A stretch of DNA of 64,000 bases from Octopus sinensis (Eukaryota), in NCBI RefSeq assembly GCF_006345805.1, contig NC_043001.1:22630001-22694000 (forward strand), given 5' to 3'. The notes below the pieces were generated by a model. That model did no database searches, had not been told where the DNA came from, and worked only from the letters and a program-made list of their open reading frames with translations. Both the position numbers and the translations under genes were made by a program. Each line of letters starts with the position of its first letter. The first letter of the stretch is position 1. Shown here in pieces: positions 8,305 through 48,109 of the stretch.

Positions 8305-8612
8305 TTCATCATCATTTAATGTTCGTCTTTCATGCTGGTGTGGGTTGGGCAGTTTGACAGGAGCTGGTAAGCCAGTTCCACTGTCTGTTTTGGCATGATC
8401 TTTATGATTGGATGCCCTTCCTAACACCAACCACTTTACAGAGTGGGCTGGATGCTTTTCACGTAGCACCAGCATTGGAGAGGTCTGCTTTAGCATGATT
8501 TTTACGGCTGGATACCCTTCCTAACGCCAGCCACTTTACAAAGTGGTGTAGGTACTTTTTATGTGGTACCAGCACCAATGAAGTCTTCCAAATACCAACC
8601 ACTTTACAAAGT
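8305..8612 (-). mobile_element. retroposon family B ((GAT)n tail)
   Basis: CATCATTTAATGTTCGTC..GGATGCCCTTCCTAACACCAACCAC, with an internally duplicated module. Confidence 0.8.
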
Positions 8613-9560
8613 AAATATATCATAATCACTGTGAATGTTTACTGTTTCCTTTTTTTTAAATTGAAATGCTTTTTTTTTTCATAATTCCTGCAGTTTGTAG
8701 GTTAGTTTCATTTCTGAAGAAATTTAAACAATATACATACATCTTCATAATGATTTGAGGCCATCAACATTTGCACATTATTTTATTGCAGACTTTGTAA
8801 TTTTATTCTTTAGTCACTCCCTCTGTTAGTGAATTCTTATAGGAGTTCTTTCAGAAATTACCATTACCATATTATAAGCTTGCTTTAGCTTACTTCTACT
8901 TAGTTATTACTAATCCAGTTTGTTCATTTGGTTCTCACTATCTTTTTTTGCCACATGTTCATATCACTATCATTTCCTTGCAATGGTTATCTTCCATCTC
9001 AACTTATTTTCTGAGATTCAGGGTAAATTGAGCTTATCACTTTTCTCTCTCCAGATGTTTCAGTGACTAACAGGTTAGACAACTGACTATTGATCCAAAG
9101 GTCATAATTTCAATCCCTTCAACAAGCTTGTCAGTGTAGCCTCAAATTAGATATGGTGTTTCAGTGAATGTAGTATAAAATATAACTATTATTTTAATAG
9201 TCTTATAGATGGTGGATATTGAGCAAAGCATTTCTCTAATACTGAATTATAATTCCAGCTACAATGCAAAATCTAAGAACAGTAAATAATTTATCATTAA
9301 ACGTAGGAAACTTACTGTATTTGATGGAATAAAGGACTCGTAGACATATTAGATGTCCCCCAATTTCAGTAGCACATATTCATAAAAACACTTTTTGTGC
9401 ATTAAGGATATAGGGCCCCGAGTTGTTATTATTATTATTAAGTTTTTTTTAATGTATGAAATTGAGTAAATTTATTCAGAGAACAACTAATTTAAGCATA
9501 ACCTGTTGTCAACTGTTCATTTTCAAAGAATCTGTTCTCACTGTGAGTCTGAAATTCAGT

Positions 9561-9922
9561 GGCTTGCTTATGAACCACATGGTTCCGGGTTCAGTCTCAC
9601 TGCGTGGCACCTTGGGCAAGTGTCTTCTACTATAGCCTCAGGCCGACCAAAGCCTTGTGAATGGATTTGGTAGATGAAAACTGAAAGAGGCCTGTCGTAT
9701 ATATGTATACATATATTATGTGTGTGTCTGTGTTTGTCCCCCCAACATCGCTTGACAACCGATGGTGGTGTGTTTATGTCCCCGTAACTTTGCAGTTTGG
9801 CAAAAGAGATCAATAGAATAAGTACTAGTCTTACAAAGAATAAGTCCTGGGGTCGATTTGCTTGACTAAAGGCGGTGCTCCAGCATGGCTGCAGGCAAAT
9901 GACTGAAATGAGTAAAAAAGAG
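9561..9922 (+). mobile_element. SINE family A (tRNA head, CORE-like ACCTTGGGCAAGT, internal microsatellite, 3' domain)
   Basis: B-box-like GGTTCAGTC and CACCTTGGGCAAGTG. Near-identical to 41866-42283. Confidence 0.9.
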
Positions 9923-9937
9923 TACTGGAATAGTTAT

Positions 9938-10136
9938 CTGGGTGGCACGTAAAAAGCACCCACTACACTCACGGAGTGGTTGGCGTTAGGAAGGGCATCC
10001 AGCTGTAGAAACATTGCCAAATTAGACTGGAGCCTGGTGCAGCCTTCTGGCTTCCCAGAACCCCGGTCGAACCATCCAACCCATGCTAGCATGGAGAACG
10101 GACGTTAAACGACGATGATGATGATGATGATGATGA
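9938..10136 (+). mobile_element. retroposon family B inserted in the mariner
   Basis: Ends AAACGACGATGATGATGATG and interrupts the transposase right after the YSPDL-like region. Confidence 0.85.
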
Positions 10137-30270: not shown

Positions 30271-31292
30271 TAGATTTTAGATTTCATTTTAAAATTTGTA
30301 AACTGAACACTATATGGATTGTTTCTGAAATTAGATGTTTTATTAAGATTTGGATTGTTCTTTGTTTATAATTAATGTTAGGTCATCAATATTTTCTTAT
30401 AGTTCCTATCTCAGAAAACCTTTTAATGTAGCACAGAAAAAAGCTTTTATATTTCTGTTGAATATATAAAATCCACAAGATTCTCTTTTTGGTTGTACTT
30501 CATAACAAGAGGCAGCTTTTTATTGTCAACATGATTAAGATAAGACAGAAATGTGAGGGTTAGAAATGAATTATTGACAAAATAAATGAATGAGAAGAGT
30601 TTAAATGAAATACTGGAATAAAGGAATCTATGTAGTGTTGGGTGTAGAGTTTAGTGAAGAGAGATGGTATGAACAACAAAAGACACGGAGAATAAACAGT
30701 GTGACAATTGTTATAGGATTGAATATTTTCAGTAAGAGTAGGTTTATTATTCAAACAAAGAATTCTCATCAGATTGCAACCTTAGATAGATACCATCTGT
30801 TGCTACTAGCATTGTTATTCTTTTACCCTTCCCCAGGTCATATATGGTTGTATAGAACTATGATTAAATGTGATCCAGCCATGACCATCCATTATTCTCT
30901 CGGTACATTGCATATCTATGACTACATTATCCAATTTGTCCTTCCATTTTGAAGGTGATCAGGTATAATTTGAGGGAGATATGGTAGCTATTTTTAGCAG
31001 ACCAAATGACCACACAGAAGATTCCTCATTTGCTCAAAGGTGATACAGTTAGTTTATATATAAAAGTAATATTCCCCTAGTAGGGCATATTTTGATCTTG
31101 TATCTATTGCTACCTACAATAATACACTAATCAAAACAGAAATCCAATTTTCAGTGATGTTGTTTTCTCAGAATATGGGAATCCAGCAGAAATTGCTTGT
31201 TAGTCTTCATATGTAAACTGAGGGTGTTTTAAGTCATGTGCCTGAAGTATAGTGTGTGTGGGATGTGTATATATAAATATATATATATATGT

Positions 31293-31534
31293 ACTTGGAA
31301 AAGGATGCGTGGCAATATATATATATATATATATACTTGGAAAAGGGTGTGTGGTGATATATATATACTTGGAAAAGGGTGTGTGGTGATATATATATAT
31401 ACTTGGAAAAGGATGTGTGGTGATATATATATACTTGGAAAAGGATGTGTGGTGATATATATATACTTGGAAAAGGATGTGTGGTGATATATATATATAC
31501 TTGGAAAAGTATGTGTGGCAATATATATATATAT
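31293..31534. repeat. minisatellite: 7 copies of ACTTGGAAAAGG(A/G)TGTGTGG(TG/CA)A separated by (TA)n of variable length
   Basis: Cores at 31293, 31335, 31367, 31401, 31433, 31465 and 31499. Confidence 0.95.
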
Positions 31535-41194: not shown

Positions 41195-41637
41195 CCCATT
41201 TAATAGCAACCTATCTGAGACCACTCATTGTTCTATGACACTTTTTGTTTAACCCTTTTGTTATACCACACATCTGTTGATGCCTTTGTTTTAATTAATT
41301 TTGAAAATTACAGAGATTATTAAAATAACTTTGTCGTTATTAAGCTGGTGTTTTGAACATAAATTGACACAAAATTTTGATAGAAGGTTCTAGATTAAAT
41401 TCAATTTAAATTCAATTTAAAACAGGAAGTTTTTATTGAAGAACCAGGAACAGTTCCAGGTGGGTTGGTATTGAAAAGGTTAAAACAAACTGAATTTAAA
41501 TCCTCCTTCAAAATTTCAGTCCGTTTATGTTCTAAACACCAACTTAATAATGACCAAGATATTTTACTAAATACTTCATTATTTTAATAATTGAAATGAA
41601 GGTAGCATATTCCATCAGAAATATAGTGACAAAAAGG
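41195..41637 (+). mobile_element. piggyBac-type MITE family P2 containing an inverted P2 copy (41253-41479)
   Basis: TTAA at 41191, 41249, 41480 and 41638. Both copies match the 52201-52370 element. Confidence 0.8.
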
Positions 41638-41865
41638 TTAATCTACCCCTAAAAGGAACTCGTGTAAATTGCATTTTTAAGCCCCACCAAATTTCATCTG
41701 GAGCACTTCATTAAAATGTTTTTATTCTGCAGTCAAACTACAATATTTACTGTATCTGTGCACCTTATCAACATAAACTCTTAGAAACTTAGATATGTGA
41801 GATGAATAAATATTAGCAATTATTTAGAGATCAATATTAACAATCATTTTACACAGAAAAAAAAC

Positions 41866-42283
41866 AGGCGCAGGAGTGGCTGTGTGGTAAGTAGCTTGCT
41901 AACCAACCACATGGTTCCGGGTTCAGTCCCACTACATGGCATCCTGGGCAAGTGTCTTCTGCTATAGCCCCGGGCCGACCAATGCCTTGTGAGTGGATTT
42001 GGTAGACGGAAACTGAAAGAAGCCTGTCGTATATATGTATATATATATATATATGTGTGTGTGTGAGAGTTTGTGTGTCTGTCCCCCTAGCATTGCTTGA
42101 CAACCGATGCTGGTGTGTTTACGTCCCCCGTCACTTAGCGGTTCGGCAAAAGAGACTGATAGAATAAGTACTGGGCTTACAAAGAATAAGTCCCGGGGTC
42201 GATTTGTTCGACTAAAGGCGGTGCTTCAGCATGACCACAGTCAAATGACTGAAACAAGTAAAAGAGAGAAAGAGAAAGAGAGA
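41866..42283 (+). mobile_element. SINE family A, young full-length copy
   Basis: AGGCGCAGGAGTGGCTGTGTGGTAAG A box, GGTTCAGTCCC B box, CTGGGCAAGTGTC CORE-like part, internal (TA)n(TG)n, GA-rich tail, CpGs retained. Confidence 0.92.
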
Positions 42284-42819: not shown

Positions 42820-43315
42820 AGTCGTAGGAGTGGCTGTGTGGTAAGTAGCTTGCTTACCAACTACATGGTTCTGGGTTCAGTCCCACTGCGTGGCGCCTTG
42901 GGCAAGTGTCTTCTACTATAGCCTCGGGCCGACCAAAGCCATGTGAGTGGATTTGGTAGATGGAAACTGAAAGAACCCCGTTGTATATATATGTATATCA
43001 TCATCATCGTTTAGCGTCCGCTTTCCATGCTAGCATGGGTTGGACGGGTCAACTGGGGTCTGTGAAGCTGGAAGGCTTCGTCAGGCCCAGTCAGATCTGG
43101 CAGTGTTTCTACGGCTGGATGCCCTTCCTAACCCCAACCGCTCCGCGAGTGTAGTGGGTGTTTTTTACGTGCCACCTGCACAGGTGCCAGACAGAGCTGG
43201 CGAACGGCCACGAACGGATGGTGCTTTTACGTGTCACCGGCACGGGGCCAGGCGATGCTGGCGACGGACACGAACGGATGGTGCTTTTACGTGCCACTGA
43301 CACGGGGCCAGACAT
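42820..43315. mobile_element. SINE A 5' half (+, 42820-42996) abutting a young family B copy (-, 42997-43315) with ~60-bp tandem modules
   Basis: Units at 43196-43256 and 43257-43315 share CACGAACGGATGGTGCTTTTACGTG. Confidence 0.85.
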
Positions 43316-44174
43316 ATATTTTACCAATATATATATATAGATAAAACTTACTTCGAAGTGGATGCGTGGCGTTTGATCATATAATAGCAAAATAATATAT
43401 AAAACATATCCATATATACATACATATATGTACATACCTACATCTATATGTATATATACATGCATATATGGGCGGGCACAGGACATCAACAAAACGAGAA
43501 ACGAAAACATGAAAGCAAAAATATGAAAACAAACTTTTTTCAAACAACGCAAAAACAGAGTACAAGACATCACAATGAATATTCCCCTTCTTCAGTTGCC
43601 CGCATTTCGAAGGTAAGGGCAAGACGCAACTTCGTTGAAACAGTTCTTCCCGCAAAGCAAATTAAATAAAATTTGGGATTTTTTGCAGAGGGGTAACAGT
43701 GGTAACAAGAACAGGACAGTAAAAACAATACAAATAAAAACAGTAAAAGACAGGACACACACACTCACATAAAGGGACTCAATGACCACAGCATTCAGAT
43801 ATTGGCTGAATTGAAATGCTGGTGGTCAAACTTCATTATGACCATTGTATCGTGTACCTCGGAAGGGCACATCACAGTACTTTTTTTGCTGGGTTCTGCT
43901 CATAATTGTGATCGAGTAGGTACCAGTTGTAGGACAGATACCATGAAAGGAGCTTCTATATAGTCACTTGTCTTGCTAATAATAGGAACCAAGTCTTTCT
44001 CAAATCCAATCTTACTCTTGGATAATAGGGTCCTGGATTCCCTAAACCTGTAGCAGATGAGATGATGATAATGGCTGGAATGCCTTTGGTCATAGATCTT
44101 CTACAATCAATGCTAACTAGGGGTTGGAAAGTAATACAACCACCATCATTAACAGCAACAACATATAGTATTTC

Positions 44175-44821
44175 CTACCTCGAAATAAAGAGGTCAAATC
44201 CTATGCACTATGGATCTCTATTGCAAGCAGACCTGGACACAATGCAGCAGTGGATCATGGACTGGCAACTCAAGCTGGCTGTGGACAAATGTACCACCAT
44301 GCATTTTGGGAGGAGAAACCCAGCGTCCACCTACTCCCTCCACAACACTAGTCTCAAAAAGTCTTCAAGTGAACGTGACCTGGGTGTTATTGTCGACAGT
44401 GATTTGCGTTGGACAAAACACATCGCCAAAATTGTCAAGAAGGCTGAGGGTGTCTTGGCATCACTCACCAAATCCTTTGTGAGCCGCTCTCCGGCTATCT
44501 AACACCCGTGGACATATTTACAAAGTAAGAAAATAGCACGGCTCCCATGACTTCAGGAAACATTTTTTCACGCTGAGAGTTGTTGAAGCGTGGAACAAAC
44601 TGCCGGCATCGGTTGTTAATTGTCGGAGCACTGCATCCTTCAAAACTTCCATGCTTCCTGAGATTTGCCAACACTACACTTGATTTTCTCCCCTCCATAC
44701 ACGCACAAGCATGTTCACTTTCCAGACATTTCTACATTACTGCATGTACTTTATATGCACTTTCTGTCAAGTTGTGGTGCACCTGAGCACTGTATACAAT
44801 AATTTCATTATTATTATTATA
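44175..44821 (+). mobile_element. 5'-truncated young CR1 LINE with an internal deletion
   Basis: LQADLDTMQQWIMDWQLKLAVDKCTTMHFG..ERDLGVIVDSDLRWTKHI..SFVSRSPAI joined to NTRGHIYK..FFTLRVVEAWNKLPASVV..SFK, followed by a 3'UTR and (ATT)n tail. Confidence 0.92.
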
Positions 44822-45873: not shown

Positions 45874-46571
45874 CTTTGTGAGTATCTTGGTGACAAATAG
45901 GGTTACATCAGGCTTAATTAGCTCCAAATTTACTATAGACAACAGGGTCCTACTAGAGTAGCTTACCCAAGACATTGTATGAAGATAGAGTTTGACTAGC
46001 CTAAATATATTATGTGAAGTGTCTATGCCATCAGTGATGTCCTCCATGAGGGCTCAAACACTGATCTAAAGACAAACAAAAAAAATATCTATGGCATTCA
46101 TTTGGAATTGTGAATGATTTTGTAGCATGTACCAATAATTTTCTAATTGTTTTAGGTGCCCATATAGTCATGAGCAGTCAAAACCACTGACTCAGTTCCC
46201 CTACTTTTGACTCAGAGGAACATCCAGGACACAGTGGCTGGAGGGAGAGAGTGAAAGTAGCATTGGTAGTCAGTTGTATTTATTTCAACAGTGTAGTCTG
46301 GAACCACATGAAATGAAAAGCCTTGCTCAAGGACACAACAGACTGCCCGGCCTAGGAATCTAATGTACAATCTTATGATCATATGTCCAACACTGTAGCC
46401 ATTGGAATATGTGCATTCACATACACACACTCACTTAAAAGGCATGGTTTGTTATTGCCATTCTGCTGAGACATCACCACTTTTACCAAAAACACACTTC
46501 CTAATAAGCCTGTATATAAGTCTTTCTATTAGAATTATTTTCCTTAGTTGAAATCCAAATCAAAAACTTAC

Positions 46572-46700
46572 CTGGATACATCTTGCCAATTTCATCAATG
46601 AAATTTTTGTCAAAGCCAGCAATGATTGAACCTCCAACAGGGACCATGAAGTTTTTGTCAGTGCTCTGGACAAAGGCATCAATTCTGCCAACACGTGCAG

Positions 46701-46701
<1 letters not shown>
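46572..46701 (-). CDS. SEPSECS: internal coding exon of O-phosphoseryl-tRNA(Sec) selenium transferase (SepSecS / SLA-LP)
   Basis: 130 nt, phase 0 to phase 1, translating to [43 protein letters not shown](G). It matches the recalled human [44 protein letters not shown], including the PLP-binding DKNF lysine. Donor CAG|GTAAGT at 46571, acceptor TAG at 46704-46702. Not in the ORF track because it has no in-frame start within the length cut-off. Confidence 0.92.
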
Positions 46702-46704
<3 letters not shown>

Positions 46705-46747
<43 letters not shown>

Positions 46748-46979
46748 TATGTATGTATGTATGTATGTGTGTGTATATGTTTGTGTGTCTGTGTTTGTCC
46801 CCCCAACATCGCTTGACAACCGATGCTGGTGTGTTTACGTCCCCATAACTTAGTGTTTCGGCAAAAGAGACTGATAGAATAAGTACTAGGCTTACAAAGA
46901 ATAAGTCCTGGGGTCAATTTGCTCGACTAAAGGTGGTGCTCCAGCATGGCCACAGTCAAATGACTGAAACAAGTAAAAG
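46705..46979 (+). mobile_element. 5'-truncated SINE family A inserted at the SEPSECS splice acceptor
   Basis: (TA)n-(TATG)n plus the family A 3' domain, flanked by AGCCTA direct repeats at 46699-46704 and 46980-46985. Confidence 0.9.
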
Positions 46980-48109
46980 AGCCTAAATATTCTAAACTTG
47001 TTCTTGATCATTTTATTTTGTAGTTTCAATTGATATCTACTTTCTACCAAAAAAAAAAATAAATAAATAAAAGAAGCAGTAAAATTCTTATTTCTTATGT
47101 TCTAAATTCTTCTATTTAGTACATTAGCAACACATAGATAAGTTTCTGTATTAGTCTTTATTTTCAGAATAAGTAGCAGATGTCTTTGCTTTTAATAGAC
47201 TTTCTCTGATTATGTTAATTTTTTTTTTTCATTCCTATCTTTTGTGAAGCAACTTTTTATACAATTTCTTACGTCATTTTTTGCAGCATTGTGTGTTTTA
47301 CAGGTGTGTTCTGCTATTGTCAGAGACACCTTTCCTTGAAGAAAAGCACTTTTACTCATGCAGAAATTTAAATTAAACCCTCTGAATTAATTAGCGATCT
47401 TACATTTTATAGTGATGTCATATAGTCTTAGAGACTATGGTATGTTCACATCTAGTATTTAATTAACTTAGATTTTGGAGGGGTCTTTCTTGCCTTCCCT
47501 GACAAGAATTGACCAGTAAAATTAATTTTTCTCTTCATTATGAATGTAATTTCCAGTTTACTTTTTTTTCTTATTCCATTCTATTAATTGTATGTTCTTT
47601 ATAGAAAAGACACCCCCTGGAAAATACTCTCCAGTCTAATAAAATTGAAACTTATATCTGGAGTTGTTACTATAGTTTTTAAAGAGCAGATTTCCTCTCC
47701 ACTGTATTTCTTCCATTTGCTTTTAATTTGGATTTCAGAGTTGTCTCACTTGCCACTTCTGGCAAGAATTTGATCACTACAGTTAATGATTTCTTTTCAT
47801 TACTAGTATTATTTTAATTAAATATAAACAAGGCCATTACAATTAGTTTCATGGCCATTGCATGAGTTTATTTAAATAGAAATTTCGATGTCCTAGATTA
47901 TCTCCCAGTCAAAATTTATACTGGGATTTTTGATTTGTTTGAGAATTCAATTTATTATGAAAATCTAATAGAATTAGATTCAGAACAGGAATTATAAGAT
48001 TGTAGCAAACTTGTAAAAGCCATATTAATTTGGAAACAGTTTTGGAAACAGTAGAATTAAAGGTAATGATAATGTTAATATAATATTAACAATATTACTT
48101 CCTTTCATT

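What the first reader, a model, noticed from the sequence alone, without database searches (positions are those of the whole stretch)
46699..46985. SINE inserted exactly at the SEPSECS 3' splice site, duplicating the acceptor
Seen: the TSD AGCCTA (TAG|GCT on the coding strand) occurs at 46699-46704 and 46980-46985, so the acceptor exists twice. The distal copy keeps the presumed original intron context (AATATTTAG). The proximal copy, the only one giving an in-frame exon, is now preceded by ~40 nt of (TA)n and (TACA)n rather than a pyrimidine tract. The antisense SINE tail adds a third, strong-looking acceptor (TCTTTTACTTGTTTCAG, AG at 46965-46964). Distal use adds 281 nt with an in-frame UGA at 46958-46956 after 8 codons; the SINE acceptor adds 262 nt; both frameshift. 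Known: SepSecS makes Sec-tRNA(Sec) for all selenoproteins, and antisense SINEs donate 3' splice sites. Inferred: if the exon is functional, this is a TE-created poison-acceptor switch that could tune selenoprotein synthesis via NMD, with (TA)n length as a rheostat. If it is not functional, the insertion marks pseudogenisation.
Basis: partly seen in the sequence, partly recalled or inferred. Interest (0 to 1): 0.78.

Follow-up and report, generated by a model that had tools for sequence, protein, structure and literature searches.

The report
SINE inserted at SEPSECS splice acceptor
A truncated mobile element sits exactly at the start of the exon that encodes the catalytic lysine of the selenocysteine-making enzyme, copying the splice signal and leaving the working copy without its usual upstream tract. 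The structure is real and resembles the dog 'merle' mutation, but sequence alone cannot show whether it changes or regulates splicing.

Summary
A 130-nt minus-strand exon (46701..46572) encodes SepSecS residues matching human 270-312, including the PLP lysine. It is flanked by TAG|G and CAG|GTAAGT. Directly upstream lies a 277-bp, 5'-truncated, antisense copy (46705-46981) of a SINE present at least 9 times in the window.

The secure target-site duplication is 4 bp, CCTA (TAGG on the coding strand).

- **Working acceptor:** no two adjacent pyrimidines for 104 nt upstream, more extreme than 99.97% of AGs in the window.
- **Displaced 'original' context:** also pyrimidine-poor (7 of 20).
- **SINE-tail acceptor:** the only one that looks canonical.

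The poison-acceptor switch or (TA)n rheostat reading has no support here. No transcript or orthologous octopus locus could be retrieved. The design is already known from the dog merle PMEL SINE.

One unexplained point: this is the only SepSecS exon in 64 kb, whereas relatives pack seven exons into 16 kb. An orphan or pseudo-exon therefore stays open.

I judge it most likely a tolerated or mildly hypomorphic passenger insertion. Interest is moderate to low until public RNA-seq is checked.

The parts
46572..46701 (-). 130-nt SEPSECS exon ([43 protein letters not shown] + G). Phase 0 at the 5' end, phase 1 at the 3' end. Carries the PLP-binding lysine.
   Evidence: Translation. PF05889 at E 8.5e-17. 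HMM of full-length SepSecS at E 1.5e-26. Aligned to human SEPSECS 270-312, with the Lys at K284. The same exon boundaries occur in L001-L005.
46566..46571 (-). Consensus 5' splice site, CAG|GTAAGT (GT at 46571-46570).
   Evidence: Sequence. The homologous donors in L001-L005 lie at the same codon position.
46701..46704 (.). Proximal TSD copy, CCTA (TAGG on the coding strand). It contains the only acceptor AG (46703-46702) that gives an in-frame exon.
46705..46981 (+). 5'-truncated SINE copy, antisense to SEPSECS. It starts inside the family's internal (TA)n/(TG)n microsatellite, lacks the roughly 190-bp head, and ends with the family's ...GACTGAAACAAGTAAAAGAG.
   Evidence: blastn against the window finds 8 other copies, with homology ending at query position 277, which is 46981. 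Alignment A1. Tail alignment. Head and tail search.
46703..46742 (.). (TA)20 directly abutting the acceptor. As RNA it is predicted to fold into an 18-bp AU hairpin ending 3 nt before the AG.
   Evidence: TRF. Regex count. Fold: MFE -34.8 kcal/mol, z -4.2.
46743..46795 (.). Rest of the SINE's internal microsatellite: (TATG)n/(TG)n on the plus strand, (CATA)n/(CA)n on the coding strand. Together with (TA)20 it gives 104 nt without two adjacent pyrimidines upstream of the exon.
46964..46981 (-). SINE-tail acceptor-like site, ctcttttacttgtttCAG (AG at 46965-46964). 15 of 20 pyrimidines, in the top 4% of AGs in the window.
   Evidence: The motif is conserved in copies 41867-42266 and about 9560-9920.
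46890..46895 (-). Donor-like GTAAGC inside the antisense SINE. With the CAG acceptor it frames a potential 68-nt cassette (46963..46896).
   Evidence: Conserved in three other copies.
46982..46985 (.). Distal TSD copy, CCTA (TAGG on the coding strand). This is the displaced acceptor AG (46984-46983) with the old intron end aatatttag.
47044..47075 (-). 27-nt T-rich tract (47075-47049 on the coding strand) followed by GGTAG (AG at 47045-47044). This is a further acceptor-like site 63 nt upstream of the distal AG.
   Evidence: Sequence. AG list.

Best explanation
**What happened (shown from sequence).** A 5'-truncated copy of an abundant SINE integrated by LINE-type target-primed reverse transcription into the first nucleotides of the SEPSECS exon that encodes the PLP lysine. 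The family has a head with pol III-type promoter boxes, but this copy lacks that head. The coding strand was nicked after TAGG, between exon nucleotides +1 and +2. The other strand was cut 4 nt away, so CCTA/TAGG was duplicated. The incomplete cDNA end was joined inside the element's own (TA)n, using the TA of the target as microhomology. The exon therefore kept an intact TAG|G acceptor. Everything upstream of it is now SINE sequence:

- (UA)20 plus (CAUA)n/(CA)n, with no two adjacent pyrimidines for 104 nt and no yUnAy motif within 120 nt;
- the old intron end, with a second TAGG, 281 nt away;
- immediately downstream of that (towards the exon), the SINE tail's pyrimidine-rich CAG.

**What it most likely does (inferred).** It is a passenger insertion, not an evolved switch. 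Productive splicing to 46701 probably persists through exon definition (consensus CAG|GTAAGT donor), U2AF35-type recognition of UAG|G, and a new branch site in the A-rich CA/UA tract, possibly brought closer by the (UA)20 hairpin. Some transcripts would leak to the distal AG, the SINE CAG, the 68-nt SINE cassette or exon skipping. All of these shift the frame and remove K284, so they would be null and likely NMD targets. The net effect ranges from neutral to hypomorphic. Changes in (TA)n length could shift the balance, as in dog merle, but nothing indicates that this is used for regulation.
For: - **Exon identity and integrity:**
- **SINE identity, truncation and orientation:**
- **TSD adjacent to both ends:** chance is 0.64% for the 4-mer.
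- **Empty site:** joining the flanks restores ...gtttagaatatttag|GCTGCACG, an AG|GCN GCN junction at the same codon as in five homologous loci.
- **5' truncation is common in this family:** copies at about 9560, 50025 and 22905.
- **Acceptor metrics:**
- **Frame consequences:**
- **Precedent:** an acceptor regenerated by a TSD still works with SINE sequence directly upstream. In dog PMEL merle alleles with short tails, splicing uses the original acceptor (PMC7349775).
- **Weak acceptors elsewhere:** pyrimidine-poor acceptors for this same exon exist in another species (L003, 8 of 20).
- **Other antisense copies:** copies with the same acceptor and donor motifs sit elsewhere in the presumed pre-mRNA, which argues that these sites are usually ignored.
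- **Genome-scale expectation (inference):** SINEs cover about 11.6% of the O. vulgaris genome (PMC13282606) and the genome has about 161,000 coding exons (PMC10700109). Hundreds of SINE ends within 2 nt of an acceptor would be expected if such insertions were neutral, so a few tolerated survivors are unsurprising.
Against: - No transcript evidence of any kind could be obtained.
- The proximal acceptor is more pyrimidine-poor than 99.97% of random AGs in the window. It has no recognisable branch motif. By vertebrate rules it should be very weak.
- The reconstructed ancestral acceptor is also poor: 7 of 20 pyrimidines, with decoy AGs at -11, -16 and -22, and a T-rich tract plus AG at -63. This is odd for a constitutive exon of an essential gene.
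- No other SepSecS exon lies in the window: 17.3 kb upstream and 46.5 kb downstream are empty. L001 has seven exons in 16 kb, and the O. vulgaris median intron is 2.5 kb.
- TSDs of the other copies are not evident, so the 4-bp TSD rests on this one case.
Confidence: 0.55

Rival explanations
1. **Orphan or non-functional exon.** The 130-nt exon is a relic or a duplicated fragment that is no longer part of the working SEPSECS transcript. The working copy would lie elsewhere, or this haplotype would be a null allele. The SINE at its acceptor is then simply unconstrained, or is itself the disabling lesion.
For: - It is the only SepSecS-like segment in 64 kb by HMM with all filters off and by a Pfam scan of 300 ORF segments.
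- The same HMM finds seven exons within 16 kb in L001. Neighbouring exons lie within 0.5-1.5 kb in L003-L005.
- Both the current and the reconstructed acceptor contexts are no better than random AGs: the current one has average pyrimidine content and no pyrimidine run at all, and the reconstructed one falls in the bottom 21%.
Against: - The exon is flawless. The frame is open, every conserved residue including K284 is present, and both the AG and the consensus donor are kept.
- The SINE copy shows 1 non-CpG and 6 CpG differences from its subfamily consensus over about 196 nt, so some time has passed without damage to the exon.
- Octopod genomes have many very long introns, and a randomly chosen window is biased towards long genes (inference).
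- No second copy is known.
Confidence: 0.25
2. **The first reader's reading.** The insertion created a regulated poison-acceptor switch. The choice between the productive (TA)n-preceded acceptor and the frameshifting distal or SINE acceptors would tune SepSecS output through NMD, with (TA)n length acting as a heritable rheostat.
For: - Three acceptor AGs with very different contexts lie within 281 nt, and two of them give premature stops.
- The repeat is long, uninterrupted and hairpin-forming.
- Repeat length varies widely among family copies.
- A working precedent for tract-length-dependent acceptor choice exists in dog merle (PMC7349775 and PMC6091007).
Against: - There is no evidence of alternative use, of conservation, or of a response to selenium.
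- In the precedent the effect is a defect, not regulation.
- The same SINE acceptor and donor motifs occur in other antisense copies in the same presumed intron space, so they are unlikely to be strongly used by default.
- The insertion looks like one of many random SINE landings.
Confidence: 0.07
3. **Different insertion history.** The SINE did not land on the AG|G. It joined a pre-existing (TA)n next to the acceptor, or the insertion came with a target-site deletion that removed the old pyrimidine tract and branch point. The CCTA match would then be chance or joining microhomology.
For: - The secure TSD is only 4 bp, and the chance of such a match with slack is 4.9%.
- The other copies show no clear TSDs.
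- The sequence upstream of the SINE does not look like a real acceptor region.
- L001 also has a (TA)22 ending 66 nt upstream of the homologous acceptor.
- (TA)n runs are frequent in the window.
Against: - The match is exactly adjacent to both element ends, and it restores a legitimate AG|GCT junction at the conserved codon.
- The (TA)n/(TG)n array is an internal feature of the family, at the same position in other copies.
Confidence: 0.1

Closest known systems
Dog merle allele: SINEC_Cf insertion at the intron 10/exon 11 boundary of PMEL (SILV)
   Same: - Antisense tRNA-derived SINE exactly at an intron/exon boundary.
- The TSD contains the original acceptor, so the acceptor exists on both sides.
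- The SINE tail carries a cryptic acceptor.
- A length-variable simple repeat inside the insert decides between productive and aberrant splicing (PMC7349775; PMC6091007).
   Different: - In merle the TSD is 15 bp and the element is full length. The variable tract is the poly(T) at the far end, which acts as a pyrimidine tract for the cryptic site.
- Here the TSD is 4 bp and the element is 5'-truncated. The variable tract is (TA)20, directly abutting the productive acceptor.
- Merle is a characterised polymorphism with a phenotype. Here, use of the sites is untested.
CFTR intron 8 (TG)m(T)n polymorphism upstream of exon 9 (own knowledge, not checked with the tools)
   Same: A dinucleotide repeat immediately upstream of an acceptor, whose length modulates exon inclusion. 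This is the classic 'rheostat' at a 3' splice site.
   Different: It is not TE-derived. A T tract is still present. The repeat is UG (bound by TDP-43), not UA/CA. There is no duplicated acceptor.
Antisense Alu exonisation in primates (summarised in PMC7349775)
   Same: The antisense strand of a SINE offers a pyrimidine-rich tract plus AG, and GT donors. Most intronic copies are silent, and a few become poison exons.
   Different: In Alu the tract is the antisense poly(A). Here it is the antisense of the AAAGAG-type tail (ctcttttacttgtttcag), with a GTAAGC donor 68 nt downstream. This copy also lies at an existing exon rather than deep in an intron.
Intronic SINE insertions near acceptors that cause exon skipping in dogs, for example FAM161A (title and abstract of PMC3976383, listed)
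   Same: A SINE close to a 3' splice site that displaces the branch point or pyrimidine tract and causes loss of the exon.
   Different: Those are upstream of the acceptor rather than in it, and they are proven deleterious alleles.

Membership tests
SepSecS (O-phosphoseryl-tRNA(Sec) selenium transferase, Pfam PF05889) | Significant match to the family profile | tested here: met
   PF05889 at E 8.5e-17 for segment 46504-46701. Own HMM at E 1.5e-26. Seven PDB SepSecS chains at E down to 2.7e-18.
SepSecS (O-phosphoseryl-tRNA(Sec) selenium transferase, Pfam PF05889) | PLP-binding lysine in the S-x-D-K-N-F motif | tested here: met
   STDKNF is present. The Lys aligns with human residue 284. That K284 is the Schiff-base lysine is from my own knowledge of the human structure.
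SepSecS (O-phosphoseryl-tRNA(Sec) selenium transferase, Pfam PF05889) | A complete gene: the other exons present and colinear | tested here: not met
   No other exon in 64 kb. The rest may lie outside the window, so this bears on the window, not on the genome.
tRNA-derived SINE (LINE-mobilised) | Many dispersed copies with a common 3' end and variable 5' truncation | tested here: met
   Nine copies in the window. Homology stops at ...AAAAGAG. Several copies are 5'-truncated.
tRNA-derived SINE (LINE-mobilised) | Pol III box A and box B head, or a tRNA-like fold | tested here: inconclusive
   Full-length copies have TGGCTGTGTGG and GGTTCAGTCCC, which resemble box A and box B by eye. ARAGORN and Rfam find no tRNA in the window. 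The SEPSECS copy lacks the head altogether.
tRNA-derived SINE (LINE-mobilised) | Target-site duplication flanking the copy | tested here: inconclusive
   CCTA is exactly adjacent to both ends (chance 0.64%; 4.9% with slack). No clear TSDs at the other copies.
Merle-type boundary insertion (SINE in a 3' splice site with tract-length-dependent acceptor choice) | Antisense SINE at the intron/exon boundary, with a TSD containing the acceptor | tested here: met
   Compared with the description in PMC7349775.
Merle-type boundary insertion (SINE in a 3' splice site with tract-length-dependent acceptor choice) | Cryptic acceptor in the SINE actually used, and dependent on repeat length | not testable with these tools
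   The motif is present. No transcript or population data could be reached.
Regulated unproductive splicing (AS-NMD, poison exon or poison acceptor) | Alternative isoforms observed, conserved across species, and responsive to a signal | not testable with these tools
   No RNA data and no orthologous octopod locus were retrievable.

The most novel reading that the evidence does not exclude
An essential, single-copy gene is spliced productively at an acceptor with no polypyrimidine tract at all: 104 nt of strictly alternating UA/CA repeat, with a (UA)20 hairpin bridging a distant branch site to the AG. The heritable length of that SINE-derived repeat sets the ratio of productive to NMD-bound SEPSECS mRNA. 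This would be a natural merle-like rheostat on the whole selenoproteome of an octopus.
Probability: 0.08. Interest if true: 0.7.

Novelty: new member of a known kind. Interest (0 to 1): 0.36.

Why it matters
SepSecS performs the last step of selenocysteine synthesis for every selenoprotein. Mutations in it are severe in humans and lethal in mice (abstracts of PMC5006159 and PMC8605217, listed).

If this exon belongs to the only SEPSECS gene of the animal, the locus is a natural experiment. It would show how much damage a metazoan 3' splice site can take: the complete loss of the pyrimidine tract, with a better-looking decoy 262 nt upstream. It would also show whether SINE-borne microsatellites modulate splicing in cephalopods, whose genomes are about 12% SINE. 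Public octopus RNA-seq or Iso-Seq can answer this in an afternoon.

If the exon is an orphan, the finding is an ordinary TE landing in dead sequence.

Tried and rejected
**1. Finding the orthologous or allelic site, filled or empty.**
- A homology search with the exon peptide returned only single-exon ORFs from other invertebrates, with a best identity of 91%.
- A search with the antisense-exon ORF and one with the ORF spanning the reconstructed empty site returned nothing.
- Exact look-ups of four window ORFs around the junction found nothing.
- A degenerate exon pattern in JGI metagenomes returned nothing.
- Conclusion: no octopod locus is reachable with these tools.

**2. Finding the rest of the gene in the window.**
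- tblastn with 12 full-length SepSecS proteins found only this exon.
- A profile HMM against all stop-to-stop segments, with filters off, found only this exon. The best extra hit (41547-41642, E 6.5) is not SepSecS-like on inspection.
- A weak HG..GSS.. hit at 10014-10085 is not colinear and is at chance level.

**3. 3'-transduction idea.** I considered that the insert runs on to the A-rich tract at 47049-47075, with a TSD of GCAG. Rejected: the resulting empty site would have no AG before the exon.

**4. Template-switch chimera idea.** I considered that the SINE cDNA switched onto SEPSECS RNA. Rejected: the exon lies antisense to the SINE.

**5. Repeat content of the flanks.** The flanks at 46982-47600 and 46000-46571 show no repeat in the window apart from one weak internal self-match (47463-47540 against 47723-47802, 74% over 80 nt), so nested-TE explanations have no support.

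**6. Other checks that led nowhere.**
- Rfam and ARAGORN scans of the window were empty.
- A literature string search for the SINE box-B region found nothing.
- No quantitative splice-site model (for example MaxEntScan) was available offline. I used pyrimidine counts, pyrimidine run length, AG-free distance and yUnAy motifs instead.
Full report
**What is there.**
On the minus strand, 46701..46572 is a 130-nt exon that translates to [43 protein letters not shown](G). It is SepSecS:
- Pfam PF05889 at E 8.5e-17;
- an HMM built from 12 full-length SepSecS proteins at E 1.5e-26;
- a gap-free alignment to human SEPSECS residues 270-312 in PDB entries 3hl2 and 4zdl.

That alignment places the Lys of STDKNF at human K284, the PLP Schiff-base lysine (own knowledge). 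The exon is bounded by TAG|G and CAG|GTAAGT. The same boundaries (AG|GCN GCN ... CCAG|gt, phase 0 and phase 1) occur in five homologous invertebrate loci, L001-L005. The codon immediately before the exon is TAG, so no upstream acceptor can extend the exon in frame.

**The insert.**
46705-46981 on the plus strand is antisense to the gene. It matches eight other places in the window at 69-88% identity, and every alignment ends at or just short of 46981.

Full-length copies such as 41867-42266 are about 400 bp long. They consist of:
- a roughly 190-bp head with box A-like and box B-like motifs;
- an internal (TA)n/(TG)n microsatellite;
- a roughly 200-bp body;
- a tail of one to three AAAGAG units.

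ARAGORN and Rfam do not call a tRNA in the window. This is my only basis for calling the genome octopod. It is a lead, not a test.

The SEPSECS copy starts inside the microsatellite and lacks the head, so it is a dead, 5'-truncated copy. Against the consensus of its four closest relatives it shows one non-CpG and six CpG-transition differences over about 196 nt. It is therefore not brand new, but it could be anywhere from about 1 to about 10 Myr old on the calibration in PMC13282606. Some of those 'differences' may already have been present in its source copy.

**Target-site duplication and empty site.**
Because the family tail unit is AAAGAG, the AG of the distal copy belongs to the SINE. The secure TSD is CCTA, which reads TAGG on the coding strand: the acceptor AG plus exon nucleotide 1.

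The chance of a match at exact adjacency is 0.64% for a 4-mer and 0.05% for a 6-mer. With 0-2 nt of slack on each side it is 4.9%. Whichever length is right, joining the flanks gives ...gtttagaatatttag|GCTGCACG, an AG|GCT junction at the conserved codon.

The geometry fits target-primed reverse transcription. The coding strand was nicked after TAGG and there was a 4-nt stagger. The truncated cDNA was joined where the target's TA meets the element's (TA)n, by microhomology. This step is an inference from established LINE/SINE biology.

**The three (really four) acceptors.**
I compared pyrimidine content at -24..-5, the longest pyrimidine run, AG-free distance and yUnAy motifs. I also compared each site with all 7,534 AG dinucleotides in the window.

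| Site | Pyrimidines (of 20) | Other features | Rank among window AGs |
|---|---|---|---|
| Proximal, productive (46701) | 10, all U | Longest pyrimidine run 1; no YY for 104 nt; no yUnAy within 120 nt; 85-nt AG-free zone | Only 2 of 7,534 AGs (0.03%) are this devoid of adjacent pyrimidines |
| SINE tail (46963) | 15 | Pyrimidine run of 7 | Top 4% |
| Distal, 'original' (46982) | 7 | Longest pyrimidine run 3; AGs at -11, -16 and -22 | Bottom 21% |
| Fourth site (47043) | not scored | 27-nt T-rich tract followed by GGTAG, 63 nt upstream of the distal AG | not scored |

For scale, the homologous acceptor has 16 of 20 pyrimidines in L001, 12 in L002, L004 and L005, and 8 in L003. Weak tracts at this exon do occur elsewhere.

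The antisense SINE also carries a GTAAGC donor at 46895, which frames a potential 68-nt cassette. The (UA)20 is predicted to form an 18-bp hairpin ending 3 nt before the AG (MFE -34.8 kcal/mol, z -4.2). This could either mask the site or shorten the path from an upstream branch point. That is speculation.

**Consequences.**
Use of 46982 adds 281 nt and meets UGA after 8 codons. Use of 46963 adds 262 nt, and the cassette adds 68 nt. Skipping removes 130 nt. Every one of these shifts the frame and removes or misreads K284.

**Context, and an unexplained point.**
This is the only SepSecS-like segment in the whole 64 kb. That holds by relaxed tblastn, by profile HMM with filters off, and by a Pfam scan of 300 ORF segments of 50 aa or more. 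The flanking introns would be at least 17.3 kb and at least 46.5 kb long.

The same HMM finds seven exons within 16 kb in L001. Neighbouring exons lie within 0.5-1.5 kb in L003-L005. The median O. vulgaris intron is 2,467 bp (PMC10700109). Very long introns exist in octopods, and random windows favour long genes. Even so, an orphan or pseudo-exon cannot be dismissed. The exon itself is flawless.

**Interpretation.**
The structure is a close analogue of the dog merle allele. That allele is an antisense SINE at the PMEL intron 10/exon 11 boundary. Its TSD contains the original acceptor, the SINE tail holds a cryptic acceptor, and the length of a simple tract decides which site is used. Short-tract alleles splice normally at the regenerated acceptor (PMC7349775; PMC6091007). 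That precedent shows a TSD-regenerated acceptor can work with SINE sequence upstream, and that repeat length can matter. In the dog, however, it is a defect, not a regulatory device.

Two points argue against the SINE acceptor being dominant by default. First, 7 of the 9 SINE copies in the window are antisense to SEPSECS. Second, at least two of them keep the same CAG acceptor and GTAAG donor.

At genome scale, SINEs cover about 11.6% of the sequence and there are about 161,000 coding exons. Hundreds of SINE ends within 2 nt of an acceptor would be expected under neutrality, so a few tolerated survivors are not surprising (inference).

**Verdict.**
My estimates are not exclusive of one another:
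- a tolerated or mildly hypomorphic passenger insertion, about 0.55;
- an orphan or non-functional exon, about 0.25;
- a different insertion history, with a chance TSD, about 0.1;
- the regulated switch or rheostat, about 0.07.

**What could not be done.**
No transcript data, population data or orthologous octopod sequence could be reached. The decisive checks are junction counts in public RNA-seq or Iso-Seq, the gene's full exon map and copy number, and the state of the site in other Octopus species.

Noticed in passing
window 1-64000: Only one SepSecS exon lies in the 64-kb window. The implied introns are at least 17.3 kb and at least 46.5 kb, against 0.5-4 kb in the homologous loci L001 and L003-L005. 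No other Pfam-recognisable coding segment of 50 aa or more is present.
   Followed up: yes
window 46896-46963 (-), and the same motifs in the copies at 41867-42266 and about 9560-9920: The antisense strand of this SINE family carries a ready-made exon-like unit: ctcttttacttgtttCAG, then 68 nt, then GTAAGC. Every antisense intronic copy is therefore a potential frameshifting cassette.
   Followed up: partly
window-wide: Seven of the nine copies of this SINE in the window are on the plus strand, antisense to SEPSECS. Antisense copies show no sign of depletion in what would be SEPSECS introns (not statistically significant).
   Followed up: no
window 42821-43120 (+): A composite repeat. The same SINE head (2 mismatches over 34 nt) runs up to its microsatellite and then continues into a different repeat (CATCATCATCGTTTAGCGTCCGCTTTCCATGCTAGCATGGG...). 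This suggests modular SINE families that share one head, or an insertion into the microsatellite.
   Followed up: no
L001 9947-9990: The closest retrievable homologous locus (82% nt identity on the exon, species unknown, no copy of this SINE) also has a (TA)22. It ends 66 nt upstream of the homologous acceptor and is followed by TAGG. This is probably coincidence, because (TA)n runs are common here, but it bears on whether a (TA)n near this acceptor could be old.
   Followed up: partly
window 44029-44499 (+): A 157-aa open segment with a weak reverse-transcriptase match (RVT_1, E 0.034, below the Pfam cut-off). It is probably a decayed LINE fragment about 2 kb from the exon.
   Followed up: partly
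window 31273-31533: A tandem array with a 32-33-bp unit (ATATATATATACTTGGAAAAGGATGTGTGGTG, about 6 copies, 93% matches). It produces long spurious ORFs on the minus strand.
   Followed up: no
window 8383-8574 and 43163-43314: Two further short tandem duplications, with periods of 100 bp and 60 bp and about 2-2.5 copies each. Their origin is unknown.
   Followed up: no
window 47044-47075 (-): A 27-nt T-rich tract followed by GGTAG lies 63 nt upstream of the displaced acceptor. It looks more like a 3' splice site than the presumed ancestral one does.
   Followed up: partly
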